Assembly (NCBI RefSeq): GCF_003918875.1
Contig: NW_025767357.1
Span: 186,001 to 250,000 of the forward strand
DNA: 64,000 nucleotides
Source: Haliotis rubra
Lineage: Eukaryota
Direction: 5' to 3'
The translations under genes were made by a program, and so were the position numbers. Under the pieces are notes generated by a model, which searched no databases, was not told the DNA's origin, and was given only the letters and a program-made list of their open reading frames with translations. Shown here piece by piece: positions 1 to 64,000 of the stretch. Position 1 is the stretch's first letter. Every line of letters starts with the position of its first letter.

Positions 1-169
1 GTTAATGGTAATGTACTGATACTATGAAAAATATGGGTGTTGCGATACATTCTATGAAAAATATGGGTGTTGCGATACATTTTTCCATGTGTATAGATGT
101 AACAGATTTCAAGTAAACTCATGACTCATGTAATAATGTATTAATGTGCATATAATACATTGATTTCAG

Positions 170-3100
170 AGCGGCATCCCCTGTGAGAAGCTCAACCTCC
201 CCCACCGTTCCGACTCCCTCAACTGGGTCTACAGAACCTTTCAGTACCAACCTGACCCTGGTTACTATGGTTACGATGAGGTTCGGGTTTACGCCCAGGA
301 CCAGGCAGGGGCATACTCTGACGTCATCACGATCAAACCAACTGTGATGGAGAGGCCATGCAAGAATGGAGGAACATGCAGAAGTAAGCCATGCCATGTC
401 TTTGTCCGCCAGCGATTCGGAACTTAAGTAACTTGTAGCCCAATGGTTAAAGCATTGACTCGTGACACCAACGACCTTGGTTCAATCCTAGACTGTGTTG
501 CTGAAAAGGGATTTGAAACTGGAGCTCATTCACTATTTTTTCATTTCAATATTTTTTTTCATGATAATCATCTTGACGTTTCTGATTTTAAAACACGTTT
601 TGTACTTGGTTTGATTACCAACATGACAAATGTATGACAGATATACATTCAGAAAAAAGTAACAAATAAGCACAAATTTAAAATGGATCGACGTCAATAA
701 CTCCCTACAGCGGCGGAGAAGCCTAGTGGTTAAGGGGTTCTCTCGTCACGCCAGAGACCCGGAATCGCTTTCCCCGGCCCATTTCTGGTGTCCCCCGCGG
801 TGGTATTGCTGGGATATTGTTAAAAGCGGTGTAAAACCAAACTCACTCACTCACCCCATCCAACTAGCGCTATGGATCACATTATGAATATCTCTGCAAT
901 GTCTACAACGTGAATCGTTCATTCACTTCATACATCCTCACATAATTCCAGGCAAAGATGAAAGCCTGTACAACTGCACCAACTACCGCCGCGCTGAAGG
1001 TTTTGACCTTTACTACGAGTGTGCGTGCGCACCTGGCTGGACCGGCATGCACTGCGAGGATGACGTCAACGAGTGTGGCAGTTCCCCATGTTCCTGGCCG
1101 TACGTCTGCTACAACGATGTCAACAGATACTACTGCGCATGTGCAAAAGAAAATCCGAACTGTGATGGGTGGCAGGCATGGATGGTCCCGCTGGTGGTGT
1201 TGGCAGTGATATTGTTAAGCATCTTATCCGAGCTGGCTTGGTATCTGTGCATGCTCAAACGAAGGTAGGTATCTCGCATGTGCGCATGGGTACGTCAGTC
1301 AAATATCAGGTTGAATATGAAAAGATCCACACTCCAATTTATACATAACGATTGACTCTGTTTCAAATTGTTGCAAATACATATTTTATCCGTGGTTACG
1401 AGCTCAGGAGAAGTGGAAAAAGAAAAATGTTATATTGAACCTGTGAAATTCTTTTTTTATTATTTGTTGATAGCAGTTCCCCTATACTTATTCAGTTTTC
1501 TTTGCAAACACCTGAACTTCGACTTTACAGAGGGACTTGAATAACAAATGGTAGTTATGCGGTGTTCAAATTTCAGCATTAGAGATCCATATTAAAGGGG
1601 AAGTAACTCTTTCAGACGAACGTTTCGGACTACGTTTGTTTTCACCCAATCGCAAGAGATATTTTACATAAAGTGGACACACAGTAATAAAAACATGTCT
1701 CAAGTACACCTCATTTCTGTTCCAACTTGGTGGTTGTCAGTTGGCCTCCTGTTTTCTTTCCATTCATTATACTTTTTCTCACCATACAGATAATTATGTA
1801 TTTTTGACTTTGTATGTGTTACTGTAAACGTATCCACCAGCTGTGTCATGAACCAAGTAGCTCTTGTATAATAAGGAGAACATTTGCCGATAAGCAAGGT
1901 ATTGTTGCATGATTATACCGTGGTAAAATGTATGGGCAAGCAAGTGCAAGAACATTTGACTAGGTGATATCCAGGAGGGTATGACATGAAAATGCGGTAC
2001 ATTGCTTGCTTTTCGTAGTTGATCAGATAATGGTCGTTAGTTGGCATGGTAACGGTTTACGTGTTCTTGCATGTATTGAGTTTATTACGCCAATGGAGGT
2101 TTTGATGACCTTTTCTTACATGTAATTAGTTTATTACGCCATTGAAACTTTTGATTATCTTTTCTTGCATGTATTCAGTTTATTGTGTTATTGGAGGTGT
2201 TGTCACCTTTCCTTGCATGGCTTCGAAATATTAAAAGATGCATTAGAATTCCACCTTAACGGAACAACTTTCTAGCAAGGTTTCCGTAAATGATGATGAC
2301 AATGTGTCTGCTGGGCGTGTGTTTGGGACACAGTATCTCCAGCACCTTTGTTGAAATATTTGGTCTTCGGAGAAAATTATATAATATACTTTGCAACCAA
2401 CCTCAAGATCTTCAGTCAAACCTCATCATACTAAGATTGCATTTTGAAACATTGTGAACAGCATGAGTAAGTCTGAATGGTGGAAGGGGTCACATGACAT
2501 ATGTCTGAGGGAACAGTTACGATTCTTAATACAACATGTTATTCCGTCTACATCTATCTTCCCAAACAATTCGACCAGTTATTATTCAATCCTAACAAAA
2601 CTCAAAATAAACACCATCAAATGTAAACGAATTAACATTGACACATTTTAATTTTCAACTTGTATGTATCAGTTTCTTATGTTAACACTGGTTATTGTTT
2701 TTTTTCTTATATGAATGTCTGAAATAATACGCTTTTCTTTCTGTTTGAAAAACCAACGTGACCGTGGACATTTTCATTATGAGCTGTAACACTGCACCGA
2801 CAAGCAAGAGAAGTCCCATTTTAGTGAAGGCGATCACTAACTCGCCCTTCAAGAGTACTTTCATCTTATTTTACAGACGATTTCACCGGTCCTGGACATT
2901 ATGTAAGACGGAAGGATCCAGAACAACTTTTGTCAATGCAGGCTTCAGGGATGTAAGTATAGTCAGATGTACACAGTGATTTAACTGTGGGCTTAACACC
3001 AAGGTATCAACATTCCAGTAAGAATTCATCGGGAGCAAAAACAAAATGGGCGTCGAGTACATGTCCATGCATGGAACTGAGCGTGGGCTTCAAGTCACAT

Positions 3101-4611
3101 AGTTGAACTATGCTGCTGTCCAACATGGACATGATAAGAGAGAGTCAGCAGCCATTGTTGTGGATAGGCAATTAACTGTCTGGCAGTAGTAATTATTTCT
3201 ACAATTTCTGTTTATATAGACTTCCCATTCCCCTGATGTAAAGTAAGTGGAATATATAATTGTACAACCCCGGATGTCGAGAGTTGATGCAGCATTGTTA
3301 CTGCCTGGATAATACGCGCCACCCTGATCTCATGCATAGACTCTTATCCACTGCCTTGACTATTCATGGCTCGATTGTTATTCAGCCAGCTCCTAATATG
3401 ACACAAGTTACCTGTTTTATCTGATATCAGTTATAAATAGGGAAGAATATTGTTTGTCCCCTTTTTTGTCATAAAAGAAGCCATTATTTCTTCCAGGACT
3501 TTAGTGAAGGTGGGAAAAGCCAAAAGGTAAGTGCCAATGTCACATCAACGTTCACAGCATAATTTGAATTTGAATTGTAATTGTAAGTCAGGACACCGTA
3601 ATTTATAGTCCTTACCTCAAAACGCAACTTTCCAACAGTACACAAGTTTAGTTTAACTTTTAGATATTTCAAATATATAAATGAACGTCGCCATTTCTGC
3701 AGGGAGCGATGTTACTTAGACATTGCGTTGTACCTATGAACTGTTTCAAATCGAAATGTTCCACAGTCCCGTTACCCTTGGGTAATTTTCAAACTGACTT
3801 TATAATATATATCGTCACAACGCAACTTTCCAACAGGACACAAGTTGGAAACTTATGATATTTCAAAACATCTAAGTCGATGTCGCCATTTGAGGAAGGA
3901 GCGATGGAAGCATAGACCTGGAATTGTAGATATGTGCTCTTCGGATGTATTATCACGTAATTAATTTCTAATCGAACTGTTCACAGTCCCGTGAGCAGTC
4001 TGGAGCGTCCTGCGTGCTCATTTCCAGTCGCCGACAAGATGATCCAACAACCCCGATGAGGTCTGACCGATCGCCCCGATCTGTGCCCGATCTTCACGAA
4101 CATCAAGCCGTAAGTAGTTACAGTGCGTTTTTTTAAACATACGAATTTAATTATTTTAGAATTTTACAACTTGAGCGTTACTTTACACAGTTCGGTACAA
4201 AAGTGAGTCCATGTCTTACAGCTTATGAGACAATGGTTTGGAACGTATTTGGTATGGAAAGACCAGTTACAACAAGGAGGATGAACACAGAATTGAAACA
4301 CCCAATTTCTAGACCTATAGACTATACGGACATATGGTTTTCAGTATACCCTCGACTGTTCTTTTCTCCAGGCGAAAAACCTGAACGGTGGTCCACGTCT
4401 CGGGGAGGCAAACGTCCGCTTTGCCCACTTTCGACATCAGTCGACTCGTCCAGGCTTCACCACGGACCGGCCACTTACACCGGTGGAAGATTACGAAGAA
4501 AGACCAGGCAGTTCATCTTCGCTTATCAGGGGCAAATCACCGGTCAGAAGAAAGTCACGTCGAATCGCCCCTGGGCCCGATCGAGAACCAGAGCCAGACT
4601 GTGATCAATGA
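170..4611 (+). CDS. 3' exons of a large uncharacterised type-I membrane protein (cadherin-like + 2 EGF-like + TM + cytoplasmic tail); paralog A, 5' part lies outside the window
   Basis: Phase-compatible GT-AG exons: 170-383 (SGIPCEKLNLPHRSDSLNWVYRTFQYQPDPGYYGYDEVRVYAQD...PCKNGGTCR), 952-1264 (EGF end, DVNEC EGF, hydrophobic TM, KR), 2877-2952 (..FVNAGFRD), 3987-4109, 4372-4611 (TGA). The first two exons have the same lengths (214, 313 nt) as exons 50638-50425 and 47421-47109 of the minus-strand paralog. Confidence 0.8.
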
Positions 4612-5163
4612 AGAACTCTATAATTCTTTACTCTGTAGATACTGTCTCCCTGAACATGCTACAATGAATTTTTTAACGTACTTCCTTTGTCTATCATAAG
4701 TGTCGTGCAAATGGTTGATTAAAAATAGAGGTTAATTAACAAAATGTTGATAAAATCGGTAAAATTAAAATTATATGAGATCAAATATTCTGATTAGAGG
4801 GCTTTAATTGATAGAAACTGCCGATAGGATGTCATCTATAAATGATATATGAATGTTGGCCGTGTGTTTCCATTGATTAAATCTCACATATTAATCTGCT
4901 TTTGCAACAATGTTCAAATTAGCGTCAAAATACAAGCACGTGTGGAGCGGAGAATGGGAACTTGAACATGGATTAGTTAATGTTTAACATGTTAAAAATT
5001 ATACGCACAACTGTACGTTTTGTAAACCTGCTAACACTGTTTCTCAAAAATAAACATTCTTCGGCAAGTTGTTTTCGTCAGTATATTACATGTCGACCAT
5101 GGTGGAAAACATCCCAACACCCCCAAAACATGCATATCCCCCCTCGTACAGACATACGTACGT

Positions 5164-5221
5164 ACACACACACACACACACACACTCACTCACTCACTCA
5201 CTCACTCACTCACACACACAC
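5164..5221. repeat. (CA)n/(CACT)n microsatellite
   Basis: Read directly from the sequence. Confidence 0.95.
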
Positions 5222-7001: not shown

Positions 7002-10000
7002 TTATGATGGGCTGTAGCATAGATTAATATAATCACTTTCATCAAAATGTCTTAAATTGTCTCGCAGTACAAAGTCGGCGAACCGTTTCAAAGGGCACAT
7101 TCCATCATGGATATGCCCATGACAAAAGGCAACCTCACGAGTGACGTCTTTACCATCATGAAGCACCCGGATGTAATGTTCAGATGTATCCTTCCGAGAA
7201 TATAGTTCCAGCACAAATCTGGATGCGTAACGCGGCCATGTTCCTCCGCCAGCGCCAAAAACAACAGATAGTGGTACCAAGGTCGCGTCATGACCAGATA
7301 AGAGATGAAATTTGGTATTGGTGACACCGTTTGCAGCATCTTGCATTTGTTCCACAATTTCAGTTAGAAGCGGATGTACAGCTAAACTTGCATATTTCTG
7401 ATACCTTTCATCTGTAATGAGATACTTGGTATAATTTGTGACATGTCCCCAAAGTTCCGATACCATTCTTGGTTTAATGCACAGACCCTGTTTGTTACAA
7501 GGCAAAGGGAGGGAGTTACATGTGTGGGAGAGAAATACATCCATCATTGCCCACATCCTTGGAAGGCGGCTCACTGGCATGTCATACATATTCGCCAAGG
7601 CGTTCACTAAAGTGTCATATCCTGTACTGTTCCTCACAGCGGAGGTAGCCAGCGCGTCCGCTTGCTTCTTAAGACTCCTCAGCACTGGACACGTGCACGG
7701 AGCTGCGAGTGTTTGTTCGGAACAGAAGAACAGATTTGAAACTCGCTTCACATGCATATCTGTCAGATTGAATCGTGGCAGAAAGGCGTAAAGGAACGCA
7801 ATGGCGCTCTGGTATGTTCGAGAATATTCCGTGCTACGAGGTAACACTTGCTCTGCACGAAAGTTGTGTCCAAAAAGGCGCCATTTTTGTACGTAACGTT
7901 CATGCATCAAGTACCCAAGATTCAGCATTTGTTTCGCGCCGACCGCACTGAGTTGTGAGGTGTCACAAACCTTCCGGCCAGGGTAGAGGGCCCAGCTCAT
8001 GAAGCCACTGTCCTCCCGTTGATGACCCTCCCAGCCCCGCATCGTTGTGACGTAGGCGGCGAGTTGGGCGTCTTTCATCACCTCCTGGGGGTCAAACTGA
8101 CAGCTAAGACGTGGGCTAGTATGACGGTTGAAGGTGTACATTGGAGATCGGTCGCCGTGTCGAGTGATCACATGGACAGAAACAAGGTTATATCCGTGTG
8201 GAGCTATTCCTGCAAAAATAAATTTTGATATAATAATCATACAATTCAGTGGTATTCAGTGGTTTCTATGGCTATTTCGGTCTTTCCATTGCTAGTCTCC
8301 GTCGCAGTTAAACATGGACATGGACAGTACTGTGTACTGGTCCTTGTTGTATCCCATAATGCCAAACGTCAGGCAGGGAAGTAAGTTCTTTCAACGTCTT
8401 TTGATGTCTCAGCCGGGGATCAAGCACCGACCTTCCGCTTTTAGTGCATGGACTTTATCTACCGTATACCAGGTGGTCATAAGTTATATTTGATAGTACA
8501 GAGCGATGATACGTTCAGGAATCGAGTTGGTCATTCTGCTTAACGAACACTTTATGTTTAACACTCTCATACCCGTGAAGATACGGGTGACTAACGGGAT
8601 CGAGTATCGCTGACCTGGTATCCCAATTACTGAGATCGATGTTCATGATGTTCGTCACTGGATTGTCTGGTCCAGAGTCGACTATTTACAGACCGCCACC
8701 ATATAGCTGGAATATTGGCGAGAGCGGCTTTAAACAACAAACAAACAGACAGACAAACACACAAACCCGATGCTTCATGGGTGCAGCTGAGTAAAGTGTA
8801 TGCAATATTTAACTCTGGATTTGACTGAACCAGTTATCATGTATCTGAACTTTATGTAAAAACGACAAACTTGCCTTCCTGTGATGCCGCCAAGATACCG
8901 TCACGGTTACAGTAGTCCGATATAGGGGGCTCCTCTGACCTGACAGGTGTGTCACGTGATGAAGCGCCAGCGTCATGTGACATGGAATTACGTTTAACAA
9001 TAGAGATCTTGTCGACCATTTGCGGGACAACGAGGTCTTTTTGTTTTGATTTTACATGTTTGGCTTCTCGAACGATACCAACATGTACGGGCATTACTGT
9101 GGCACCCAATTTATCATTATGGTCCGCCAACTGGTACGGTGGGTTAACTCGGAGTTCCTGCAGCTTCATGATGGTCTTAGAACCGATATTGATAGGCTCT
9201 CTCATATCCGCCTCCTCGGCCAGAAACGAGTCTGAAAAGATTTACAGTAAATGCATCAGTTTCCAATTGAGGATTTCTGGATGATTCAGTGAAGGTTTTG
9301 CCACATTCATTAACCTTCGACTGACAACTGAACTGGGTCCCGATCCACAAAACCTTCGTAACGTTAAGAAATGTCGTAACTCTATAGTTTACCATAGGTT
9401 TACGAATGTCGAAGCTCTACGAACGTTTTGTGGATCGGCACCCAGGATCTTCACATGGTAAGATAAAGCTCTGGGCCCCGATCCACGAAGCGTTCGCAGC
9501 ACTACGGCATTCGTACACCTATGACAAACTATATTGTTACGAAGGGTCGTAACGTTACGAACTCTTTGTGGATCGGGGTCCAGATTAACATTTGCAAACA
9601 TAGTTAAAATTGTAGAGCAGTTCCGTTTTTCCCTGATATGGAAATAGTTTTTTTACCATACGGATATCCCATGGTCTTCGAAATATGGGTGTATTGAAAG
9701 GCTGAAGTGAGGTGCAATTCTTAGTGTAAAAGTGTGGTGACGTCAGAATGTAACAATGATATTGTTGATGCTAGATTGGTAGAGGTGTTTAAACTAAATT
9801 TATATCAACGATTATTGTACACATATAGCTTGATGTTACACATAAAACGTTAATGTTAATATCCCGATGATAATAGTTTGATTTATGGAATAACCCACAA
9901 GTTACGGGTCTATGTTGTAGGCCCCGAACCTTCACCTGTAGGTTTGTTCACACTCGCCCCCAGGTAGTATATATTCTAAGACAAATACAGGTTTCCGATC

Positions 10001-21198: not shown

Positions 21199-21311
21199 CA
21201 GGTCCTAGATTTTCGAAGCTCTCTTAGTGCTAAGATAGTCCTGAGTGCCATACATTAACATTAACTTACGACTATCTTAGCGGTAAGAGAGCTTCAAAAA
21301 TCTAGGCCCTG
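21199..21311. mobile_element. ~112-bp palindromic MITE
   Basis: CAGGTCCTAGATTTTCGAAGCTCTCTTAG...TAAGAGAGCTTCAAAAATCTAGGCCCTG. Confidence 0.7.
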
Positions 21312-44002: not shown

Positions 44003-44321
44003 ACAAATACACGCTTGAACTACATGTGCACTAAAGGCAATGTATGTACGTGATCTGTGATTTCATACATCCCCCTTCAATGACATCCCGTCAGCTGTTG
44101 CTGTCATGTAACTCCTTACACAGATACTAATTAACTTTCAAGGAGACACTTTTACAGCTTGTTCGTTATGAACTTTCAAGACCCATCTGCATTGTGCAGT
44201 AATAAGATAAAAGAACAAATTCAAGTTCACACATTTAACACACTCTATCCCGATATACATTAAATGTCCAGATCGTAAATCTGGTTCTATGGCTGGTTTT
44301 AGTTCCGTTAGTGTCTCAAGA

Positions 44322-50300: not shown

Positions 50301-51087
50301 GAAGAAACCTGGAAAAGAATAAAGGAACACTTGTACTTTCATGTGTTCCCTTATTTGTTTGCATGAGTATAGTTATAGAAGGCATGCGCAACACAGGGTA
50401 TGAAGTAAAGGTATCAATACTTACTTCTACATTTCCCACCATTTCTGCATGGTGTCTCCATAATCCCTGGTTTAATGGTGATAACATCAGAGTACACCCC
50501 TGTCTGGTCCTGGACATAAACCCGGATCTCTTCATCACCATGGTAACCAGGGTCAGGTTGGTACTGGAAGGTCGTGTACACCCAGCTGAGGGAGTCGGCA
50601 GGATGGGGCAGTTGCAACTTGGCACAGGGGATGCCGCTCTGAAATTATATGGTTCTACATGGCTACGTATATCCGCAAATGTTTGGATTATTGTATGCAT
50701 TGTTTTCAGGATATATTGAATTCCGATCTGCATTGTTTCACCAACTGGGTTTTCGTAAGTCACAAAGCAATGGGCAGGTTACGAATCCATCTTGCATAGA
50801 ATCACGTAAAAACGAGAGGGTTTTATTCACCTACAGCTACACTTTATGCAGATATATGAATATGATAATTTTAAAGATTGTTTTGAGAGTTTTATTGTAC
50901 GCCATCCTCATACATAAGCATGTCTTTGACCCAGGTTGATGTCAACAGGAGATTTAGTACCAACATATGCACGGAGGTTCAATGTATGACGAAAGTCGAT
51001 AAACTATTACGGTGAAACATCCATTAGGAATAAGAATAATGTATTAGGAGAAAGATCATCATGAACTTATTTGAAATTCGGGTAAGA

Positions 51088-51150
<63 letters not shown>

Positions 51151-54100: not shown

Positions 54101-57100
54101 CCGGGTCTCTGACCTCCGTGCCTGTTTCATGTTGACAGGTCTTGTTGCTCTGTTGCCACTGTTTGGCATCTGTATCATACAAACATCATTAAGCAGAGGC
54201 GATCTCCACTGATGTAATGCACGTTGCAATTGTGAGTTATTGCTTGATTGTCTAGTGAGTGAGTTGAGTTTTACGCCGCACTCAGCAATATTCCAGCTAT
54301 ATGGCGGCGGTCTGTAAATAATTGAGTCTGGACCACACAATCCAGTGATCAACAGCATGAGCATCGATCTGCGCAATTGGGAACCAATGACATGTGTCAA
54401 CCAAGTCAGCGAGCCTGACCACCCGATCCCGTTAGTCGCCTCTTACGACAGCATAGTGGCCTTTTGTGGCAAGCATGGGTTGCTGAAGACCTATTCTACC
54501 CCAGATCTTCACGGGTCCTGATTGTCTAGTAGAGCGTCTAGATAGCTTCAGTGAGGGAGTGTTTTTTTTGTCGATTTTAACAATACCCAATCAATATTCT
54601 GGCGGGGGACACCATAAATTGGGGTGACACATTTTACCCCTTTTTGAAGTGACGAGCGAACGATTTAACCACCATTCTCCCCCATCGCCCCTTCCAGATT
54701 AAATAATAGTAGCAATGACAAGACTTGACTTTCTGGATGATCAACTTCTTCATTTTGACAATGGCGACGTTTCGGTATAGATTCTTATACCGTTTTCAAG
54801 CATATGGGGGAATGATGGAGTACACCAGTTTATATACAAGATAAGATAAAGAGATAACAACGCTAGGAAAACAAAGCATTTAGACAAGGCTTCTAGAATG
54901 CCACAGAATAAATAATAGTAAATATTATAATATCAAGTACATGCAATCCGGGTGATCACTATATCCCCATGGATTTTACACGAAATTTCATCATCAACAT
55001 CAGTTCATATCAAAATACAGTTGACAGTGTCAGTCTGAAGTCTTCACCCAAAACACCACTGTGACGTGCTTCAGGGTCTCGTTGTTTCATATAATCATTT
55101 AAAACTAAATCATTCAACATCAACTTTATTTGACATTATTTGAATTTGGGTTATGGATAACAGTCTAGTACCCTGATCACTCGGAGACATCGTCTTGTAT
55201 CAATAATCAATTCATCAAAAAGGAAAATGGCTACTTATAGTATAGTTCCCCGTCAACATGGGTTGAACCAACTAAACCATTCCGTAATCGTAAAACTAGG
55301 AGTGGAAAACCATATCCACAAATTTTACAAATACGTTATAAAATCAGAATCCATTGTAATCTTTGAAATACCATGAGTATGTGCCTATGAATCAGTATTA
55401 AAAAGTGATGACACATGGTGTATCCCGAGGTCACAAACACATGCAGAGGCAAGTCACTTGCAGTGAAATGTATGCCCGGTGCATTAGGAAACAAGGGCAA
55501 AAGCTGTGGACTGGTTTCCTATGAAAGGAAGTACATATACAGAACATTACCTGTGTTCCAGTGAAGCAGCATCAACGTTGTGTTGGTCACCGTGGGATCA
55601 TAGGTGAAGGTCACTTTCACCGGTCCTGGCATGGGAAGATTACCAATGCTGGTGAGAGAGAACGAGAGGTCGGTTTCCTGGTAGTTGAGCCTCTTTCTGA
55701 GGATTCTGTCCGTGAAGGCATCTTCTGTGGTTGACGTAGATGGGTCAGTGATGTATGGGACGAACTCCACCGAGGCGTCAGACTTGTATTCCGTCTCTAG
55801 ATCCAGCTTTGTGAGCTCAGTGACTACGATGCTCTGACCAGTTTGTAGGCCTGTATCAGATATGACATACAACAAATGAAGTAAATCAGATTTGCTGTGT
55901 TCGTTATTGTTTTGACATGTACTGTCGAAATGAAACCGCTAATGCATGTACTTACCATCTGGTGTTGACACAGTTACTCCTGAAACATCCCTCTTTCTTC
56001 TAGCACCACCACCAACATCTACAGTAACGGCAGAACCATCTGACGACGTCGCCATCGAGGACTTGTCCGTCTCCACTATGGTAGAGCCCAGCAATATGGT
56101 GGTACACAACTGGGCCTCATTACACATCTTCATGAAGATGAACATCTCTGTGCCTGGAGCCATGGTGAAGGCTGACCTGTCCGTGGTGGTGTTGGATGCG
56201 TTGTAATTTGTCTTCAGCTGGCTCAGTGTGTAGACAACATTGCCGTTTAGTTTGAGGTATCCATCAGCTACTGTGATCGTCCCCGACTCGTTGTAGCCGA
56301 CCCAGGTGCAGGGGAAGATGTCACTGATGCTGGTCTCGGAATTCCCCACACAGAAATCTATATCAAGAATATGTGAACATGAACACTTACAATTCTCAAA
56401 CAAATCAGAGTTTTCGCCACATATCCATATTGGCAAAATTCGGAATGCGATAATAAACCCCAGTTCAACTAATAATAATAGACAAAGGAACCATGTCTTG
56501 GTATCAGCACAACTTTCAAACGGTATACTTGGGCAATTATCATCTGAGTCATTATCTTCTATTACATAAGCAATAATAATATGATAATATGAAATCTGGC
56601 CACAATCAATCCACCTGTGCACACATGTGATATAGTAAGTCTCCGCAAAATAATTCTACGAAATTCGTACACGACTTTGACTGACATTCAAGCAGTTTGT
56701 GAGTAAATAAGAAAGCAAAGAACTTCACAGATACAACTGGTTAACTGCTTACAGCAACGTTTCGATACAGATTCTGACACCGTTACCAAGCTGGAGTATT
56801 ATAGGGACGTGGTCAAGGTTATTGAGTCTCCACCAGTGGTAATAACTATTCAACCAGTCAGTGAGTGTGTTGAGTTTTACGCCGCACTCAGCAATATTCC
56901 AGCTACTTGAAGGCGGTCTGTAAATAATCGAGTCTGGACCAGACAATGCAGTGATCAACAGCATGAGCATCGATCTACTTATTTCGGAACCGAGGACATG
57001 TGTCAACCAAGTCAGCGAGCCTGACCAACCGATCCTGTTAGTCGCCTCTTACGACAAGCATGGGTTGCTGAAGATCAATGAGTGAGTGAGTGAGTTTAGT

Positions 57101-60100
57101 TTAACGCCGCACTCAGCAATATCCCAGCTATATGGCGGCGGTCTGTAAATCATCGAGTCTGGACCAGACAATCCAGTGATCAATAGCATAAGCATCGATC
57201 TGCGTGATTGGGAACCGATTACACCCGATCCCGTTAGTCGCCTCTTACGACAAGCATAGTCGCCTTTAATTGCAAGCACATGGGTTGCTGAAGACCTATT
57301 CTACCCCGGATCTTCAGGGGTAGCTGAAGATCAATTCTAACCCGGATCTTCAAGGGCGATTCAAACAAGCAAGAACACGTGACGGTGGAGATTTCGGATA
57401 ATGCTGAGAAACAGGATACATTTGTTTCTTGACGCTATTAATAGTTTGCGTATTCCCTAAAATGTACGCTCTAATGATGGTTACGTGTGCGCGCTGCTTG
57501 TATCGGCAATTGTTGGAAATACTTACTTGGGGCAGACACGTGTGTTGTTTTGTTGATGAAATCTGAGGTTCATGTGTTGACATTAAGGGTTAAATAACAA
57601 AGTTACCTGCAGTTACCACACATCAACATTATATGCACTGATCGGTAATTACCGTATCTCCGGATGCTCTCATCATCAGATACCGTCCAGGAAGCACCTA
57701 CAATATTCTGGTCCTTGGTTGCAATGGAATTTGGTGGCGTCACTGTCTCCCCTAGTGGATCAGCTCCCTGTATCGTCGTGATGACGTCATCAACCAAAGG
57801 AGACTTAAGCAGCACCGTCACACCTTAGGATAATTAGATGATGTAGACTTTTAGATACTTGTAGATATTTATATGTAACATTTGGAATTGTACTTTCTCA
57901 GTGAAGTACAGAATATAGTACTTTTGTTACGTTGAGTTCCATCCCAGATTCTAACCCACACTCTCAAAGTGAGGCACAAAATCGCCAGTACAAAACGTGA
58001 GCTGTCTTGCCCACTCCACTGGCTTCCACACTTTATTCATTTCACTTTAAATAAAACGTTTCAATGATCTTCTTGTCCTGAAGCAATGGAGTCACACATA
58101 ATACCCACTGTGCAATTAATTAAACCATAAGACTATGTTATTATTTTTCCTATAACGTCATTTGACAATTCTGACGCTCAACGATATTCAGCGAAACGTT
58201 TGAGATTCGCAAACGTAGGTCTCTATAGACAAGGATCAGGGCCGTGTTCAAGCAAAACGCTTCATATTTTGAAGACCACCGAAGAGATACGAGAGAGTTT
58301 CTGGTCAGTAGAATAAAATACCACATGTATGCGTGGCAAAACCTCTTCGACACCCATAAGAACTCTCTGCTAAAAGCAGAGTCGATTGTTATTGACGACT
58401 ATATATTGACCATGTGTTTATATATAAAGGTGAGTGCCCCACCAGTCGCAACCCTTACAAATACCTGCCAACCTAGCCAAGTGTTCACCTGAACAAAAAC
58501 GGGAATATATGGTACAAGTCAAAATAAGGAACTGAATCGGTCATCTTTTTTGGCAGTGTCACATTTGGAAATATCCTCCACATCTCACACGTTTCCCGGA
58601 ACTTATGAAAACAGTTGGCACGGAATCAGATATGAGTAAAATGACTAAAACCGTATACATTTTCTGAATATAAAGGAAAAAAATATGACAGTATTTTAAT
58701 ACATGCACAGCTCTGAAAAGAGTAATAATCAATTGTTTGATGTATTGAGGTACGCACCTCTGGGATCAGCGTATGTTGTGACCAGCCCACCCCCGTTGGT
58801 ACATCTGACGGTCACGTAGTACGTCGTGTTGTGTTCCAGGAGGCCTCCAAGATCGGAGTTAGTTGAGGTTGGGTATTCTCCTGCTGAGACAAATGTCTGC
58901 AACTCTTCTCCACCTGGCGTCTTGCCTATTGCCCAGTCGTAGTTCTGGAGATGTTAAATGTTCACGTCAAAACAATATCAACAATGTATGTTTTTGAGTG
59001 AACGCAACTGAACTTTAATGACTACACATTCAATACGTTCTTCTGGACCTGGTGTTCAAAGACTACTGGGCTGTCTGAGAATGCTATACAGTAGTTGGTT
59101 AAATGTTCGATTCCTCACACGGATAGTCAGACGCCGATTTCTGGTCCTACCGTCTAGATGTGGATGGAATATTGCTACCCCAATATATAAACTTCAGGTA
59201 TCACGAATGTCCATTGAACTAATTATACATGAACATGGTGATATTGAACACATGAGGACTGGATAAACGAGGCTTCATTGTGCATACACTTGCATGAAAC
59301 GTCCTACCTTGCTGACTATCACACAAAAAATAACAAACGTGATTGACACAACAACTTTTGATGGAAGGACTTTCCATCATGTTTCTGTTGAATTTACCAG
59401 TTTATATAAAAGAGATATTCTCAAATACCTCAACAAAGTCTTACCACAATTTCACTCTCGTTATCGTTGCACTTCCATATAGCCTTAATAGTGTCGTTGG
59501 ATCCCTGGTACGTCACAGGGGTGAAGTTGCCCTGAGTGACGTCGATGTAGAGCATGAGGTCAGGGTCGAACAGTGGTGGTGACGTGTCGATGTTGAAGCC
59601 GTCAGATGACGATACCGCCTCTGTACCAGACCCAAGGACAGCTTTCACTGGAATCATCAGATTTACCAAGTGGTTCATACATACGGAGCGGAGTGTACGA
59701 AGATAAAAGCATGGAGGTTTCTATGTTGCTTTGATATGCATACAGATCAGATAACAAATGCTGTGCTTCTGTCTTACGTTTTAACATTTCTGTTCCGTTC
59801 TCGATAAGGCGTACACCTACCTGTCTAAAACTGTTCAACTTACCTGTGAGGTAGTATAATACAGGGACTACTTCTCCCTCCACGACTGTTGATTCTGTGA
59901 GGTTGAGGTCGTTGAGGGTGATCTTGACCTGGTCTGTTGATGAGCTGTCACATGATGCGTCACATGTGTAGACGTCACAGGGAGTCAGACAGGGGATACA
60001 TGGTGTATGTACCTAGCAACACGTAGAACACGTCACAGTAAGCTGACGTAACGTCACAGGGAGTCAGACAGGGGATACATGGTGTATGTACCCACCAACA

Positions 60101-63100
60101 CACAAAAGACGTCACAGTAAGCTGATATAACGTCACAGGGAGTCAGACAGGGGATACATGGCGTATGTACATAGCAACACGTAGAACACGTCACAGTAAG
60201 CTGACGTTACCCTCATTACCCGACCAAAGACCACATCACGCAGACAGACATAACCGAAATACTGTTCCGTTCTCGCATAACACACGCAGTAAGCCCGTAG
60301 GAGTCACTTTTTCACATAAAAACATTCTATAGCTAATTAGTTAGACATGGATACACATTCTCACCTGCTGGTATGGCACTACATCGGACAACCCAGATGC
60401 AGACCCGATTCCAGCCTCATACCGAACAATGGCGTTGTTACCTCCTTGGAAAGGGTTGCCATAGCGACACAGATTCTCCTTTACAGCTGGCATCACCAGG
60501 TCACGGAATGAAGCCGTAGCACTCCAAACCTGTAGATGTCCTTCCGAATCTCGTTCAGTGTCAGGAATATAGTTCTTGTGATTCCAGACTCCCAGGAAGA
60601 GTTTGGTGTCGGGAGAGAGACGTGGTATCCCACATTGTTCCGTCAGGACATCTCCGTCCATTTAGATGAACATGCACCAGGTTATCTGAAGCAGGTATGT
60701 AAAATCAAGAACAAGTATGTCTTGTTGATTACTATGCAGGAAGGTTTTGCATGCTTCGAGCTTTTGCTTTCAAACGTATTGTAATATGGTTAAAGGGCAT
60801 TTGGTATGAGTGAGTTTAGTTTTACGCCGATTTTAGCAATATTCCAGCAATATCACGGCGGGGGACACCAGAAATGGACATAACACATTGTGCCCATGTG
60901 GGGAATCGAACCCGGGTCTTCGGCGTGACGAGCCAACGCTTTAACCACTAGGCTACCCCAACGCCCCAGACTTTTAGATACTTGTAGATATTTTTATGTT
61001 ACATTTCGTATGAGGAGTATATGACTCTGCATAATCATATAGTGTATGCATTCACTTGCAATATTAAACTCGTCACTTAATATTTATCTGTACCATGTAA
61101 CATTGTTCCTACTGATTGTCTATGCTTGGACATGGAAGATATTGGATCATATATGGTGGCATGGACCTGTGCTCTGCACATTCTGGGCATATGTGCCTTT
61201 TGACCCACTGTACATTGTAAGTATTATGACTGACAGATCCAATTTCATATGAAACTGGTATTGCGTGTAGCCCAATAAGAAAAAGGTTCTCTCGTTTTGG
61301 CAAATACCCAAATACGACTCTCTAGCCATACTCTCCCAGATATCAACTCGGTACCTCAGTACAAGTCCATCCGTTCGAACTGTTAGCAAATTACCAAGTA
61401 CATGTAACCAGATGCCTTCTGAAAGGTACTTGAGTTCACCCTTTCACGTGAAGACCCACCTCTTCAAATCACGTTTATAATATATTTCTGTACCTCTGAT
61501 TAAAACAGCCCACCTTCAATGTTCATGGGTGTGGCGCAGAGAGCATTAACTTGGGCGTAAAATGAATGGAATGGACGTATATCGACATCATCATCATCAT
61601 CATCATTGTTACTATTATGAGCATCACTACCTCTGACCCCCTGGCCTCATCCCTGTGTGTAGTGAACCTGATCCAGTACTGATGGTAATCTCCAGAAGGG
61701 TCTTGTTCCAGATTTCGCACAACTGACATCGGTTTATTCAAGTTGTCGCCATACCCACACCAGGCCACCAGTTTGGCTTCTTGTCCTGTAAAACATATAG
61801 AGTGTCATACCGCGCTCTTGGTGTTAACATTTGTCTGCTGTGTGTTGTGTAACCGCGCTCAGCAGTATTCCAGCTACATGGCGGCGGTCTGTAAATAATC
61901 GAGTTTTGACAAAACAGTTCACTGATCAACATCATGACCATCCCATAGGCGGATCCAGAGGGGGGGGTGCAGGGGTGCGCACCACCCCTTTTGTGCTGAA
62001 AGTTTGTTTATACACTATTGAAACTCGGGTGTAAATGAAGTGTGCACCCCTCCTTTTCTTAATAGTGTGCACCCCCCCCCCCCCCTTTCTCAAAAGCTGT
62101 ATCCGCCCCTGCATCCGTCAACCAGATTCAACCAGATCTACAACCCTGAAATCCCACCGGTTGCCACCAGCACGGACTCCTGAAGATCGTGTTCTAACAC
62201 GGCTCTTCTAGCGTCGAATAAACGCTTTTGTATTCTTATTAGAGACCGACATTTTAGTATCAGAATCCCATTAATGCGATGTCAGAAAACACCATTCTTC
62301 CTTCCATGACCCTGACCTGGTCATACGTTCACAAAAAGCTGCAAGCATTGACTATAAACCAACCAGCTCGTTCACGTACCCGAAAACAATTGCAACCCAC
62401 AGGACTTTCTGGGAGTAAGTTTCATTTTGTCCGCTTCAATCTTGTCAGTGATTGAACCAGTTTCCTGTAATTTCTTTTATCCTCATCCGTGAGCTTCGTC
62501 ACCTGATAGCCTGGGTCATCCTCGTCAACAGATCTCTTGCTGATGGTACTGACTGACCTCGTGGAACAGTTGCAGGCACAGGACTGGGATACCAAACAGA
62601 GATTCAAATCTTCAACTGAACATAGGACGAATCTGAAAACTCACAGCTGTCTAAAATGTTTATTCTATAGTCAAGTAAAATCTGAAATTACTTTTTACGA
62701 GTGTGTGTGTGTGTGTTTCTGCCTGCCTGCCTGTTTGTTCGTGATGGTATTGACACGTGTCAGTGTTACAATGCAAGCCCTCTGAGATATCATGCAGTTT
62801 TTTTATGAATAGCCAGCCCAGAGATCATATACAGCCTCTGACTCGATCCTACAGTAGTGTTATTTCCGACGTTATGCCGATCAAACGAAGGGTAACAAAA
62901 CGCTCTGTTTTAACGGTTTTTTTATTCAAACCATCAACCTCTGGCTCTCCTGACAGACACTTCACCTGACGACATAAGCGGCCTTACAATATCCAAGATG
63001 ACTTCTATTCTGAACGTATGCAAGTCCATGATTACTACATTATCACTTACATCAGGAACAGGATCCACCCTGCAACAGGCACACGCTGGGTCAGGCCAGA

Positions 63101-64000
63101 CAGGTCTTGGTGTGTAGTCGTAGTCCAGGATGTAGTCATCAGGGCCGTCCCAGAACAGGACACTGGTGACCGCTTGACCATCACCTGCTGCAGCTCGGAT
63201 AGTGAGCTGAAACACAGAAAACGTCATGTTTTCGTACACATTTTCTATTAATGGGGAGATTTTATAGATGTCGTCTTCATTTGGAGGACACATCGTCATA
63301 AAGAAGTTGCCGTCCATGAAGTGCTCAAAAAACACAACACAACTCATCATTAATCAACAAGATTTACTTGTATCATTTAACATCAATCATTTCAACAGAT
63401 GTCACTCGTTGGGATGTTGAAGGATTCATTTGGATGATTTTGCGCTTGTTCACTCCAAATACTAGTGCGTGATCCATGAACACGAGGCAAAATGGACACT
63501 GTGTTGAATGACTGCTGGACATGTAAAATGAATGATGCAGGACAAAAAGGGCCATGGATTTTGCAAACATTATTGTTAATTAATTTCCCTTCTGAAATTA
63601 TGCAGACATGTACAACGTCACGGAGTCTGATCACTTAATCTCTTTGATTCCCTCTAACGACCAGTATACATATAGGTTCTTGACGACCAAACCAATCATT
63701 ATAGCCATTTTTGACTCAGATCATAGACTGGAAAAGGTAACGTGAACTATGTGACAATTTGTATCACAATACCTTATACTCTCCGCCATTGAGAAGGTCA
63801 GCATCTCTGAAGTAGGTTCCAGAAGACATTGAGTCAGTCTTGGTATCTCTGGCCAGTTTGATGTCCACTTTGCGGGACTCGGTATGCACGTTGGCTGATC
63901 TGTAGGTCAAGGTCAAGCTGCGGTTGTTGCTGTCATGGTTACGGTCAGACTCCAGGTACATCCACTCCGAGTCATCAAATCTAATTTGTCTGATAGGACA
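44322..64000 (-). CDS. Very large uncharacterised type-I membrane protein (FN3-like repeats, GPS/ZU5-like module, cadherin-like repeats, 4 EGF-like, TM, tail); paralog B, 5' part lies outside the window; two disabling lesions (possible pseudogene)
   Basis: 23 GT-AG exons: >64000-63773, 63206-63051, 62583-62380 (1 nt short), 61785-61631, 60685-60365 (TAA at 60664-60662), 60012-59844, 59647-59445, 58944-58758, 57823-57653, 56357-55956, 55850-55551, 54169-54078, 53690-53525, 53002-52888, 51987-51783, 51399-51226, 50638-50425, 49013-48834, 48608-48423, 47421-47109, 45232-45142, 44777-44719, 44448-44322. Motifs: SSDGFNIDTSPP, YDWAIGKTPGGEE..YYVTVRCTNGGGL (FN3-like); TFTPAANFYG..VNDPP, YDFDIGD (cadherin-like); CACAPGWTGMHCE (EGF). 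Confidence 0.85.
44762..45027 (-). repeat. Degenerate 35-37-bp tandem repeat x ~7 spanning an acceptor junction
   Basis: Unit ~AATGACATTWAGTTYTAG|YGCCCCCGMCCTTAAGG. Confidence 0.75.
46221..46928. mobile_element. Non-autonomous foldback DNA transposon with ~213-bp TIRs and an 8-bp TSD, inserted in a SINE
   Basis: 46221-46434 is essentially the exact reverse complement of 46714-46928; termini CACAGGG; TSD TTCCCACA at 46213-46220 and 46929-46936. Confidence 0.92.
51088..51167. repeat. (GT)n(CT)n compound microsatellite
   Basis: Read directly from the sequence. Confidence 0.95.
53147..53550 (-). repeat. 45-46-bp tandem repeat x9 spanning an exon/intron donor junction
   Basis: Unit TCTCTTGTCATGCAGGAAGACCAGG|GTATGTGTCTC...; GT at 53524, 53478, 53433, 53388, 53342, 53296, 53250, 53204, 53158. 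Confidence 0.92.
54257..54518 (-). mobile_element. SINE-like family 2 (~260 bp, non-tRNA structured head), full-length representative
   Basis: 12-bp TSD TGATTGTCTAGT (54245-54256, 54519-54530); shares its 3' tail with family 1. Other copies (approx.): 6147-6320+, 8572-8765+, 15440-15640+, 20420-20620+, 24060-24160-, 24650-24739+, 25775-25970+, 27760-28003+, 39420-40030- (split), 40110-40352-, 47487-47747+, 49078-49190-, 49580-49695-, 61840-62200- (split). Confidence 0.9.
54760..54806 (-). ncRNA. Candidate minimal type-I hammerhead ribozyme (U3-A8 variant) of Penelope-like element type
   Basis: Minus strand reads GC-UUGAAAA-C-GGUAUA-agaauc-UAUACC-GAAAC-GUC-GC; stem I is weak. Related copies at 56752-56793(-), ~47980-48020(+), ~43470-43495(+). 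Confidence 0.45.
56857..57356 (-). mobile_element. Family-2 SINE nested inside another family-2 SINE
   Basis: Inner copy 57080-57322 is flanked by a 13-bp TSD GCTGAAGATCAAT (57067-57079, 57323-57335) that interrupts the head of the outer copy. Confidence 0.85.
59972..60209 (-). repeat. 79-bp tandem repeat x3 spanning an intron/exon acceptor junction
   Basis: Unit ..GTGTTGCTAG|GTACATACACCATGTATCCCCTGTCTGACTCCCTGTGACGT. Confidence 0.92.
61944..62111. mobile_element. Short MITE (CAKRGGCGGAT termini) inserted in a SINE
   Basis: CATAGGCGGATCCAG...CTGTATCCGCCCCTG; 5-bp direct repeat CATCC at 61939-61943 and 62112-62116. Confidence 0.75.

What the first reader, a model, noticed from the sequence alone, without database searches (positions are those of the whole stretch)
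170..64000. Convergent pair of giant uncharacterised receptors with conserved ectodomain exons but divergent TM and tail
Seen: paralogs A (+, ends 4611) and B (-, ends 44322) face each other across three unrelated genes. They share exon lengths (214 and 313 nt). The first ~105 nt of the EGF exon of A differ from B exon 49013-48834 at 5 positions, all synonymous. The tail exons differ in length and keep only islands: FVNAGF/FDNEAF, PDLHEHQ/PQDLHGQ, RPLTPV/KPLTPI. B's architecture (FN3-like repeats, RRKR, GPS/ZU5-like module, cadherin-like repeats, EGFs, TM) is not one I can assign to a named receptor family. Inference: an undescribed, diversifying family of adhesion or recognition receptors with different signalling outputs.
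Basis: partly seen in the sequence, partly recalled or inferred. Interest (0 to 1): 0.7.

Follow-up and report, generated by a model that had tools for sequence, protein, structure and literature searches.

The report
Two giant abalone surface-protein paralogues
The window holds the tail ends of two old, still-exchanging copies of a 7,500-residue abalone membrane protein from an unstudied family that appears to join a yolk-protein-like lipid-binding head to a long rod and a membrane anchor; the copies evolve under ordinary constraint, not rapid diversification.

Summary
A (+) and B (-) are real, colinear paralogues. Each has about 125 exons over more than 100 kb and encodes about 7,400-7,500 aa. 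They lie tail to tail across a histidine-phosphatase gene and an MCH1-like transporter gene. The assembly gap sits in an intron of that transporter and touches neither A nor B.

The shared exon lengths (214 and 313 nt) and the five synonymous differences hold.

The interpretation needs correcting:
- The TM exon is among the more similar exons.
- B's last tail exon was read in the wrong frame. The H. cracherodii B-type orthologue supports a 64-aa tail ending at 44347.
- Divergence is a mosaic. Synonymous divergence per exon runs from 0.03 to saturation, which fits an old split plus exon-limited gene conversion.
- dN/dS is 0.25 overall, and no exon exceeds 1.

A-type and B-type each have orthologues in H. 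rufescens and H. cracherodii. The pair belongs to a five-copy cluster.

The family is annotated only as 'uncharacterized'. In molluscs it seems to combine a vitellogenin/apoB-like head, an M23 domain, an FN3-like rod, a conserved furin site, a GAIN-like module, two cadherin domains, EGFs and one TM helix.

This scan had already noted the same family on another contig (s1-353945). Function is untested.

The parts
170..383 (+). Gene A, 214-nt exon: end of the second cadherin-like domain plus the first half of an EGF.
   Evidence: AG/GT sites and alignment to B 50638-50425. Matches P0077 residues 7189-7266 at 82%.
952..1264 (+). Gene A, 313-nt exon: second half of an EGF, a Ca-type EGF and the TM helix. 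It carries an A-specific Glu codon at 1230-1232.
   Evidence: Pfam EGF hits.
2877..2952 (+). Gene A tail exon 1, with FVNAGF at 2929-2946.
   Evidence: Splice sites and phase. Matches the P0077 tail.
3987..4109 (+). Gene A tail exon 2 (...MRSDRSPRSVPDLHEHQA).
4372..4611 (+). Gene A tail exon 3 (TPVEDYEERPGSSSSL ... EPEPDCDQ, then the stop at 4609-4611). B has no counterpart.
   Evidence: Homologous exons occur in C713 (three places) and C99, but not in B.
7002..8240 (-). Intronless histidine acid phosphatase gene (His_Phos_2), unrelated to A and B.
   Evidence: Pfam E 2e-26. A broken duplicate lies on C713.
22681..31592 (-). MCH1-like MFS transporter gene. Exons at 31592-31449, 26231-26004 and 23760-22681. 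Its intron 2 holds the assembly gap (24740-25564).
   Evidence: tblastn of P0097 and P0098. Pfam MFS_1.
44347..44448 (-). Gene B last exon in the orthologue-supported frame (TDRHHN...SERV, then stop TAG at 44349-44347).
45142..45232 (-). Gene B tail exon 1 (GMQPPCCKHSRNNQEPGRAGAAFDNEAFTG).
   Evidence: Phase-consistent splice sites. 54% identical to the P0096 tail, E 5e-6.
47109..47421 (-). Gene B 313-nt EGF/EGF/TM exon.
48423..49013 (-). Gene B: two extra in-phase EGF cassette exons (49013-48834, 180 nt; 48608-48423, 186 nt). Each joins the 5' part of the EGF/TM exon type to the 3' part of the 214-nt exon type.
   Evidence: Both exon types are present in the H. rufescens B-type protein P0076.
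50425..53003 (-). Gene B: four exons (53003-52887, 51986-51780, 51399-51226, 50638-50425) encoding two cadherin-like domains.
   Evidence: tblastn. In the Mytilus homologue the equivalent residues 301-555 match cadherin-23, PCDH15 and CELSR1 EC pairs at Z 10-11. Weak Pfam Cadherin_4 and Big_9 hits.
53138..53550 (.). 46-bp minisatellite, 9 copies. It starts in the 3' end and donor of the exon above it.
   Evidence: TRF.
53525..55857 (-). Gene B: three exons (55857-55540, 54179-54075, about 53690-53525) for a GAIN-like beta-sandwich. It ends in the strand DTYFRHPTQFLL (HPTQF at 53624-53610). The RRRR site found here in all other copies is missing.
   Evidence: One structural match to the CD97 GAIN domain: Z 9.7, 144 residues, rmsd 3.1.
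55940..56358 (-). Gene B: FN3-like exon ending in the conserved furin-type site RRKR (56001-55990).
   Evidence: The site is conserved in all molluscan homologues examined.
57654..64000 (-). Gene B: at least 10 further ectodomain exons (HSP ranges 64039-63770, 63209-63024, 62559-62383, 61786-61625, 60688-60359, 60012-59845, 59654-59502, 58947-58750, 57824-57654). The gene runs on to about window coordinate 154751.
   Evidence: tblastn of P0077, P0076 and P0096. Pfam finds nothing in them.

Best explanation
WHAT IS THERE
The window holds the 3' ends of two anciently duplicated genes, A-type and B-type. They belong to an unnamed family of about 7,500-residue type I membrane proteins.

The two genes lie tail to tail. 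They are part of a five-copy cluster in abalone that grows by segmental duplication. Exon-sized gene conversion keeps the copies partly alike.

ARCHITECTURE (inferred from homologues)
- a signal peptide;
- a vitellogenin/apoB/MTP-like lipid-binding head;
- a helical stalk with an M23 (LytM) domain whose metal-binding motifs are kept;
- cysteine-rich repeats;
- a long FN3-like rod;
- a conserved furin site (RRKR);
- a GAIN-like sandwich whose last strand follows a second basic site;
- two cadherin-like domains;
- Notch-type EGFs;
- one TM helix;
- a disordered tail.

HOW IT PROBABLY WORKS (inferred, not shown)
The protein is made as a membrane-anchored precursor and cut by furin-type proteases near the membrane. 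The giant lipid- or particle-binding ectodomain is then either held non-covalently on the stub or shed.

The A-type tail has an FxNxx[F/Y] motif plus distal TPVE...EPEPDY motifs. The B-type tail keeps only the first motif and ends early. The two types would therefore differ in trafficking or adaptor binding, not in ligand-binding fold.
For: SHOWN
- Colinearity, and alignment restricted to exons.
- Reciprocal orthology. A is 82.5% identical to the A-type P0091 and 76.2% to the B-type P0096. B is 82.0% identical to P0096 and 76.3% to P0091. Thirty-six exons show a clean type pattern.
- Synonymous divergence is heterogeneous: chi-square 882 on 104 df. 47 exons have pS below 0.25 (pooled dS 0.17); 36 have pS of 0.45 or more (pooled dS 1.3).
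- Several exons are more alike between A and B than to any orthologue.
- dN/dS is 0.25 overall.
- Seven family copies exist in the genome, five of them close.
- C713 carries a duplicate of A plus a broken copy of its neighbour gene.
- The B-type short tail is shared with H. cracherodii.
- The RRKR site is conserved across molluscs.

FOLD-LEVEL, ON HOMOLOGUES
- The nine best PDB matches of the N-terminal model are all lipid-transfer proteins: lipovitellin, MTP, vitellogenin and apoB100 (E 1e-9 to 4e-6).
- EnvC/LytM is also matched.
- Pfam M23 scores 29 bits, and the HxxxD and HxH motifs are kept.
- The Atlas look-alikes are vitellogenin and MTP.
- Cadherin EC pair at Z 10-11, and CD97 GAIN at Z 9.7.
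- The TM helix is modelled and the tail is disordered.
Against: - No experiment and no clear RNA evidence for B. In four RNA-like runs only an A-type transcript contig (from A or its C713 duplicate) covered the EGF/TM exon.
- The N-terminal model is poor (mean pLDDT 57, TM-scores about 0.2). Pfam Vitellogenin_N does not hit the Haliotis fragment P0088.
- The GAIN-like call rests on one match in a multi-domain model. No Pfam GPS, GAIN, ZU5 or SEA hit was found.
- Structures were predicted for homologues (Mytilus, H. rufescens), not for A or B.
- B's last-exon frame is supported only at E 0.004.
- H. rubra B alone has lost the second basic site, which could mean decay.
- The tail motifs are conserved only in gastropods.
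Confidence: 0.7

Rival explanations
1. One reading: a fast-diversifying family of recognition or adhesion receptors. Positive selection drives the copies apart, and the divergent TM helices and tails give different signalling outputs (a paired-receptor logic).
For: - The family is multi-copy and clustered.
- The tails differ in length.
- A's TM helix has an unusual Glu, as in receptors that pair with adaptors.
- Orthologues are only about 82% identical between abalone species.
Against: - dN/dS is 0.25 overall, 0.16 in the old exons and 0.30 in the converted exons. No exon exceeds 1 once frames are fixed; earlier values above 1 were wrong-frame artefacts.
- The neighbouring transporter is as diverged between species (85%).
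- Both types are kept as orthologues across species.
- B's TM helix equals the family consensus.
- No kinase, ITAM-like or other signalling domain was found.
Confidence: 0.12
2. Gene B of H. rubra is a decaying or non-functional copy. The real finding would then be one working gene (A-type) beside a relic.
For: - No B transcript contig was seen in four RNA-like runs, while an A-type one was.
- B alone lost the conserved RRRR site.
- Its tail is short, and its tail exons have no other copy in the genome.
- No long RefSeq model of B surfaced.
Against: - About 93% of the 7,417-residue orthologue maps onto B in order. The only stops found lie at ends of matches that run into introns.
- dN/dS stays low in B-specific exons.
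- B is as close to its orthologue (82.0%) as A is to its own (82.5%).
- The short tail is a conserved B-type trait, not a fresh truncation.
Confidence: 0.12
3. The products are not receptors but secreted or matrix polyproteins, for example a lipoprotein, clotting, mucus or shell-associated material. The TM helix serves only for sorting, before furin releases the whole ectodomain.
For: - Several conserved basic cleavage sites occur: RRRxRR, SGRxKR, RRKR and RRRR in the family consensus.
- Lipid-transfer-family relatives are secreted and furin-cut (established knowledge of apolipophorins and vitellogenins).
- The tails are poorly conserved outside gastropods.
Against: - The TM helix and the juxtamembrane KRGR(L/F)xW are kept in most copies and phyla examined.
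- The gastropod tail motifs are conserved from Patella to Haliotis.
- A GAIN-like module next to the membrane suggests a held, not freed, ectodomain.
Confidence: 0.2
4. Assembly artefact: A and B are uncollapsed haplotypes, or the scaffold join at the gap mis-orients B.
For: - A gap lies between the two genes.
- A second contig (C713) carries a 92% copy of A's end.
Against: - Overall dS between A and B is 0.46, and introns are unalignable.
- The two genes have distinct orthologues in two other species.
- The transporter gene spans the gap in the right order and strand.
- Its H. rufescens orthologue sits on the same scaffold as the H. rufescens giant genes.
- C713 has a broken neighbour gene and no transporter, so it is a duplicate, not an allele.
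Confidence: 0.03

Closest known systems
Large lipid transfer proteins (vitellogenin, apolipoprotein B, MTP, apolipophorin II/I)
   Same: The N-terminal roughly 700 residues of the molluscan members are predicted to fold as a beta-barrel plus helical horseshoe. Their best structural matches are lipovitellin, MTP, honeybee vitellogenin and apoB100. Dibasic furin-type sites resemble the processing of apolipophorin and vitellogenin.
   Different: All known members are secreted or ER-luminal and have 900-4,500 residues. This family adds about 6,500 residues (M23, Cys-rich repeats, FN3-like rod, GAIN-like module, cadherin-like domains, EGFs) and a TM anchor. Pfam Vitellogenin_N is not detected in the Haliotis fragment tested. 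The deuterostome homologues scanned or listed show no such head: the crinoid protein starts with a PAN domain.
Adhesion GPCRs and other GAIN-domain proteins (CD97/ADGRE5, latrophilin, polycystin-1)
   Same: A very long adhesive ectodomain, a GAIN-like beta-sandwich next to the membrane (Z 9.7 to CD97), a Trp...Trp...Cys...Cys pattern, and a last strand (HPTQFLL) that recalls HL|TxFAVL.
   Different: One TM helix, not seven or eleven. There is no CxC-HL(T/S) GPS motif and no Pfam GPS or GAIN hit. Cleavage would be by furin at basic sites, not by autoproteolysis.
Notch, Crumbs and HEG1 type EGF-TM proteins (amphioxus members are auto-named CRB1 and HEG1)
   Same: Notch-type EGFs directly before a single TM helix (E down to 5e-23 against Notch1 EGF structures). 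A furin cut in the juxtamembrane region as at Notch S1.
   Different: No LNR, ankyrin, PDZ-binding or KRIT1-binding tail features. The EGFs are a very small part of the protein.
Giant cadherins and usherin-type FN3 rods (FAT, CELSR, cadherin-23, PCDH15, USH2A)
   Same: Size, single-pass topology, EC-fold domains (Z 10-11) and a long FN3-type rod.
   Different: Only two EC-like domains, best matched at sequence level by 'bacterial' cadherin-like Pfam models. No catenin-binding or PDZ-binding tail.
EnvC/LytM (M23 peptidase domain on a coiled coil)
   Same: Long helices followed by an M23 domain (Foldseek E 2e-5 to 1e-4 against EnvC; Pfam 29 bits).
   Different: EnvC is a bacterial, catalytically dead activator. 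Here the HxxxD and HxH motifs are kept, and the domain sits inside an animal surface protein.

Membership tests
Large lipid transfer protein superfamily | N-terminal beta-barrel plus alpha-helical horseshoe (lipovitellin-type fold) | tested here: met
   Model of P0088 (H. rufescens paralogue, N-terminal 1,187 aa). PDB ranks 1-9 are all lipid-transfer proteins (E 9.7e-10 to 3.8e-6). The helical part has pLDDT 80-90, but the barrel is below 50. It was tested on a homologue, not on A or B.
Large lipid transfer protein superfamily | Sequence match to Pfam Vitellogenin_N (PF01347) | tested here: inconclusive
   No hit at E 0.05 or better in P0088. Precomputed PF01347 is listed for the Patella and Mercenaria homologues. 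The Atlas look-alikes are vitellogenin and MTP at 0.86, which is a lead only.
Large lipid transfer protein superfamily | Lipid-binding cavity and actual lipid binding | not testable with these tools
   Needs biochemistry.
GAIN-domain proteins / adhesion GPCRs | GAIN fold next to the first TM helix | tested here: inconclusive
   One match: 8ikj_R (CD97), Z 9.7, rmsd 3.1, 144 residues, model residues 70-300 of the Mytilus homologue.
GAIN-domain proteins / adhesion GPCRs | GPS motif CxC-x-HL(T/S) and a Pfam GPS match | tested here: not met
   A reads RHQTQF, B reads RHPTQF and Mytilus reads SEETQF. There is no CxC and no Pfam hit even at E 10.
GAIN-domain proteins / adhesion GPCRs | Seven (or eleven) TM helices | tested here: not met
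   A single hydrophobic helix followed by KRG.
   No Pfam ZU5 hit. No ZU5 chain appears among the structural matches shown. A weak match cannot be excluded.
Cadherin superfamily | Tandem EC-fold domains | tested here: met
   Model residues 301-555 match cadherin-23, PCDH15, CELSR1 and protocadherin EC pairs at Z 10-11. Profile hit to PCDH15, E 1e-3.
Cadherin superfamily | Long EC array and a cadherin-type cytoplasmic tail | tested here: not met
   Only two EC-like domains. The tails carry no Pfam domain and are predicted disordered.
Peptidase M23 | Pfam match above the cut-off, with the HxxxD and HxH metal motifs | tested here: met
   P0088 scores 29.0 bits against a cut-off of 28.7. A has EYEHEGID and NEHIHFS; B has KSHIHLA. 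Activity is untested.
Paired activating/inhibitory receptors | Near-identical ectodomains with opposite signalling tails (ITIM against a charged TM residue plus adaptor) | tested here: not met
   The ectodomains are a mosaic of 39-100% identity. No ITIM or ITAM was found. Only A has a TM Glu, and its close duplicate C713a does not.

The most novel reading that the evidence does not exclude
Molluscs carry a so far unrecognised class of surface protein: a lipid-transfer (vitellogenin/apoB-like) head with a possibly active M23 peptidoglycan-type peptidase. The head is held some hundred nanometres from the cell on an FN3-like rod and coupled to the membrane through a furin-cut, GAIN-like module. 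Invertebrate deuterostomes have relatives of its rod-and-anchor half only. It would work as a tethered sensor or capture device for lipoprotein particles or microbes. The A-type and B-type tails would route the captured cargo differently.
Probability: 0.15. Interest if true: 0.8.

Novelty: new variant of a known kind. Interest (0 to 1): 0.5.

Why it matters
If the architecture holds, this would be, as far as I could find, the first lipid-transfer-family protein anchored in a membrane. It would also be one of the largest single-pass proteins known, and it is present in several phyla yet unnamed. That gives a concrete candidate for how molluscs capture lipoproteins or microbes at the cell surface.

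The locus is also a clean natural example of exon-limited gene conversion between 100-kb paralogues. Introns have diverged beyond alignment, while individual exons are kept 95-100% alike.

For annotation, the H. rubra RefSeq model found here for gene A (P0087, 4,990 aa) covers only its middle part, and no long model of gene B turned up. The B-type tail also needs the frame given here.

Tried and rejected
- Pfam on 20 single exons of the window gave almost nothing: EGF only, plus weak Cadherin_4 and Big_9.
- My first dN/dS pass used the best tblastx frame. It gave values above 1 for about 17 segments. These turned out to be wrong frames or non-exonic matches with no hit in reference proteins, so I redid the analysis with frames fixed by orthologue alignment.
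- The H. rufescens B-type model P0076 has an odd tail (VISCQY...) that matches nothing in B or in any paralogue. It is probably a model that ran on past the exon's end into the intron, and I did not use it.
- Haplotig reading of C713: rejected.
- RNA evidence: the four likely RNA runs gave mostly repeat-derived contigs. No splice joints for B's EGF or tail exons were seen.
- Foldseek on the whole 887-residue C-terminal model returned only generic tandem-Ig and cadherin arrays.
- The profile search against PDB sequences found EGF and cadherin only.
- Five literature searches found no paper on the family, and none of the six LOC numbers I searched appears in any paper held.
A's first roughly 350 codons and the full C713 and C99 genes were therefore not read.
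- I did not send a joined spliced model of A or B to any search or fold tool. Searches were done exon by exon, by reference, or with database proteins as proxies. The joined tail translations were made only inside a script, to check phase and stop codons.

Full report
**Where the window lies.** The window is G000:C2467:186001-250000 of an abalone genome. RefSeq proteins that map to this same 2,893,661-bp contig name the species as Haliotis rubra. I fetched 100 kb on each side.

**The gap, tested first.** The N run at 24740-25564 lies between genes A and B and touches neither.
- It falls in intron 2 of an MCH1-like MFS transporter gene on the minus strand.
- Exon 1 is at 31592-31449 and exon 2 at 26231-26004, both right of the gap. 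Exon 3 is at 23760-22681, left of the gap.
- All three are in the right order and on the same strand.
- The H. rufescens orthologue P0098 aligns through residues 49-124 and 108-465 with nothing missing.
- P0098 lies on the same 6.64-Mb H. rufescens scaffold as the giant genes P0076 and P0077.

The join, and with it the convergent arrangement of A and B, is therefore supported. The true length of the gap remains unknown.

**Checking the observation.**
- A (+) and B (-) are colinear over more than 100 kb in about 125 matching exon segments. Nucleotide alignment covers only 26 kb of about 105 kb, essentially the exons, at 70-99% identity.
- The two shared exon lengths hold exactly: 214 nt (A 170-383, B 50638-50425) and 313 nt (A 952-1264, B 47421-47109), with AG and GT sites.
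- The first 105 nt of A's 313-nt exon differ from B's extra exon starting at 49013 at five positions, all synonymous.
- B has two extra in-phase EGF exons (180 and 186 nt). Each joins the front of the EGF/TM exon type to the back of the 214-nt exon type. The H. rufescens B-type protein P0076 contains both kinds. Another note on this window (s1-329580) covers these exons.
- A ends at 4611 as stated.

- *B's last exon.* The consensus donor GGC|GTAAGG (exon end 45142) and acceptor CAG|ACC (exon start 44448) are both phase 0. They give the reading TDRHHNRRRGFAITRSDPPRSPWSVGKPRSERV and a TAG stop at 44349-44347.
- *Support for that frame.* It aligns with the tail of P0096, the 7,417-aa H. cracherodii B-type protein (TNQHQQRLSNLGHAKTRFDPTSAPRSVG...; E 0.004 in a 4.5-kb search). 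B's first tail exon aligns with P0096 at E 5e-6.
- *The spurious islands.* PQDLHGQ and KPLTPI lie in a different frame that needs a weaker donor. At DNA level B's last exon is homologous to A's second tail exon (RSDRSPRS against RSDPPRS), with an indel.
- *The real difference.* B-type proteins stop inside the second tail exon and lack A's third one. A's third tail exon has homologues on C713 (three places) and C99. B's tail exons occur nowhere else in the genome.
- *The TM helix.* It is not generally divergent. The EGF/TM exon is 91.8% identical. B's helix equals the family consensus, and it is A that carries unique changes: Val-Pro at the start and a Glu at 1230-1232.
- *The intervening genes.* I identified two, a His_Phos_2 gene at 7002-8240 and the transporter, plus a Tc1-type remnant.

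**What the genes are.**
- A search of 1.8 billion representative proteins with one B exon found 62 relatives, all unnamed.
- Full-length members of 7,400-7,950 aa exist in H. rufescens, H. cracherodii, Patella and Gigantopelta. Members of about 4,700-7,200 aa exist in bivalves. Members of 2,100-5,400 aa exist in a ribbon worm, amphioxus, an acorn worm, a crinoid and a sea star.
- Every source calls them 'uncharacterized' or 'hypothetical', apart from automatic labels: CRB1, HEG1, or 'domain-containing' names (Vitellogenin, Cadherin, Fibronectin type-III).
- Five literature searches found no paper on them, and none of the six LOC numbers I searched appears in any paper held.
- The H. rubra genome has seven copies. 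A, B, two on C713 and one on C99 are 92-97% identical to B in the most conserved exon. Copies on C247 and C2590 are 57-62% identical to it there.

**Orthology and mode of evolution.**
- Chained alignments give A 82.5% to the A-type P0091 and 76.2% to the B-type P0096. B is 82.0% to P0096 and 76.3% to P0091.
- In 36 exons, A is closer to A-type proteins and B to the B-type protein by more than 5 points. The split therefore predates the separation of H. rubra from the H. rufescens/H. cracherodii lineage. That excludes uncollapsed haplotypes.
- With frames fixed by orthologue alignment, 110 exon segments (6,418 codons) give dS 0.46, dN 0.115 and dN/dS 0.25.
- 47 segments have pS below 0.25 (pooled dS 0.17, ratio 0.30). 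36 have pS of 0.45 or more (pooled dS 1.3, ratio 0.16). No segment has a ratio above 1.
- The spread of synonymous divergence is far beyond sampling error: chi-square 882 on 104 df, with weak clustering along the gene (lag-1 autocorrelation 0.18; 112 of 5,000 permutations reach it).
- Several low-dS exons are more alike between A and B (95-98%) than to any orthologue (85-94%).
- Their intron flanks are slightly but not uniformly more alike than chance. Flanks of high-dS exons are at chance level.
- I read this as an old duplication followed by repeated gene conversion, continuing after speciation. The conversion is confined to exons because only exons still offer homology.
- Protein constraint alone cannot make synonymous sites 97-99% identical in some exons and saturated in others.
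- The neighbouring transporter is about 85% identical to its H. rufescens orthologue, so the giant genes are not unusually fast.
- My first pass gave ratios above 1, but those segments were wrong-frame or non-exonic matches.

**The cluster grows by segmental duplication.** C713:137018-142987 aligns with window 49-5892, through introns and 3' flank, at 87-94%. It is followed by a copy of the phosphatase gene that carries a frameshift and two stops. There is no transporter copy. C713 is therefore a duplicate, not an allele.

**Architecture.** I sent no joined spliced model to any tool. Domain work used single exons by reference, or database proteins as proxies.

*N-terminal part.* The model is of P0088, the N-terminal 1,187 aa of an H. 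rufescens paralogue, built with a 12-row alignment (mean pLDDT 57; helical region 80-90).
- Its nine best PDB matches are lipovitellin, MTP, honeybee vitellogenin and apoB100 (E 1e-9 to 4e-6).
- EnvC, a coiled coil plus LytM domain, follows.
- Pfam finds M23 at 1048-1152 (29 bits). The HxxxD and HxH motifs are kept in A, and HxH in B.
- Atlas look-alikes and the precomputed Pfam hits of the Patella and Mercenaria homologues agree with a vitellogenin-type head.

*C-terminal part.* The model is of P0005, a Mytilus fragment that begins at the exon I searched with (mean pLDDT 67; residues 1-667 mostly above 70).
- Residues 301-555 match pairs of cadherin EC domains at Z 10-11.
- Residues 70-300 match the GAIN domain of CD97 at Z 9.7 (144 residues, rmsd 3.1). 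This is a single hit in a multi-domain model, with no Pfam GPS, GAIN, ZU5 or SEA support. I call the module GAIN-like, not GAIN.
- The EGFs match Notch EGFs at E down to 5e-23.
- A TM helix is modelled and the tail is disordered.

*Cleavage sites.*
- The site R(R/K)KR just before this module is conserved in all molluscan members examined. In B it lies at 56001-55990.
- A second site, RRRR before DTYFxHxTQFLL, is present in A, in the C713 copy, in the A-type and B-type proteins of the other two abalones, in Patella (RRRR) and in a sea star (RKRR).
- That second site is missing in H. rubra B, which reads SSSPG---SAS there.

**Tails.**
- After the helix, all gastropod members share KRGR(L/F)xW.
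- An FxNxx[Y/F] motif follows in A (FVNAGF), B (FDNEAF), the A-type and C247-type proteins and Patella. It is degenerate in the H. cracherodii B-type and C2590-type proteins (CDNEGF, FVNSAC).
- A-type, C247-type and Patella proteins end in EP(E/R)PDY.
- Bivalve and deuterostome tails are unrelated.
- The FxNxxY resemblance to the LDL-receptor internalisation signal is my own recollection and is untested.

**Expression.**
- The run search listed no run on record as RNA. Four small runs of one study look like transcriptomes by size.
- Laid on 44300-50299, they gave mostly repeat-derived contigs.
- One 849-nt contig on the EGF/TM exon carries A-type letters at 16 of the 17 listed positions. It fits A or its C713 duplicate, not B.
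- So an A-type gene is probably transcribed. B's transcription is neither shown nor excluded.

**Verdict.**
- The sequence observation is good, and the pair is real.
- It is not a fast-diversifying receptor pair. It is two conserved types of an unnamed giant surface-protein family, under purifying selection and partly homogenised by gene conversion.
- The family itself, already met by this scan on another contig (s1-353945), is the interesting part. Its apparent lipid-transfer head on a membrane-anchored 7,500-residue protein is, as far as I could find, undescribed.
- Its function is inferred only.

Noticed in passing
window 53138-53550 (and gene A at about -4603 to -2741, outside the window): A 46-bp minisatellite (9 copies in B, roughly four times longer in A). 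Its first unit is the 3' end and GT donor of a coding exon, so each unit carries a donor-like CAAG|GTATGT site.
   Followed up: partly
G000:C713:137018-145290: A recent segmental duplicate of gene A's 3' end, its flank and the neighbouring histidine phosphatase gene. DNA identity is 87-94% including introns. The phosphatase copy is broken (frameshift, one TAA, one TGA).
   Followed up: partly
window 1230-1232: Gene A alone among the seven genomic copies has a Glu codon (GAG) in the middle of the TM helix and Val-Pro at its start. Its close duplicate on C713 has Val at the Glu position.
   Followed up: partly
window about 53640-53660: H. rubra gene B lacks the RRRR site (a 3-codon deletion plus substitutions). 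The site is kept in every other abalone copy examined, in Patella (RRRR) and in a sea star (RKRR).
   Followed up: partly
window 23807-23980: A local duplication of the last 58 codons of the MCH1-like transporter gene, just upstream of its last exon. It is 97% identical at protein level.
   Followed up: no
window 29400-29840 (-): A Tc1/mariner-type transposase HTH remnant (Pfam HTH_Tnp_Tc3_2, E 7e-9) inside intron 1 of the transporter gene.
   Followed up: no
window 7002-8240 (-): An intronless 412-codon histidine acid phosphatase ORF (His_Phos_2, full-length domain). A 44% identical relative lies on C413.
   Followed up: partly
family consensus, alignment A2 (outside the window): The molluscan proteins hold about nine repeats of an unassigned cysteine-rich module of some 200 aa, two SAP-like motifs, a glycine-rich beta region and a PAN-like domain. 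All lie between the M23 domain and the FN3-like rod.
   Followed up: no
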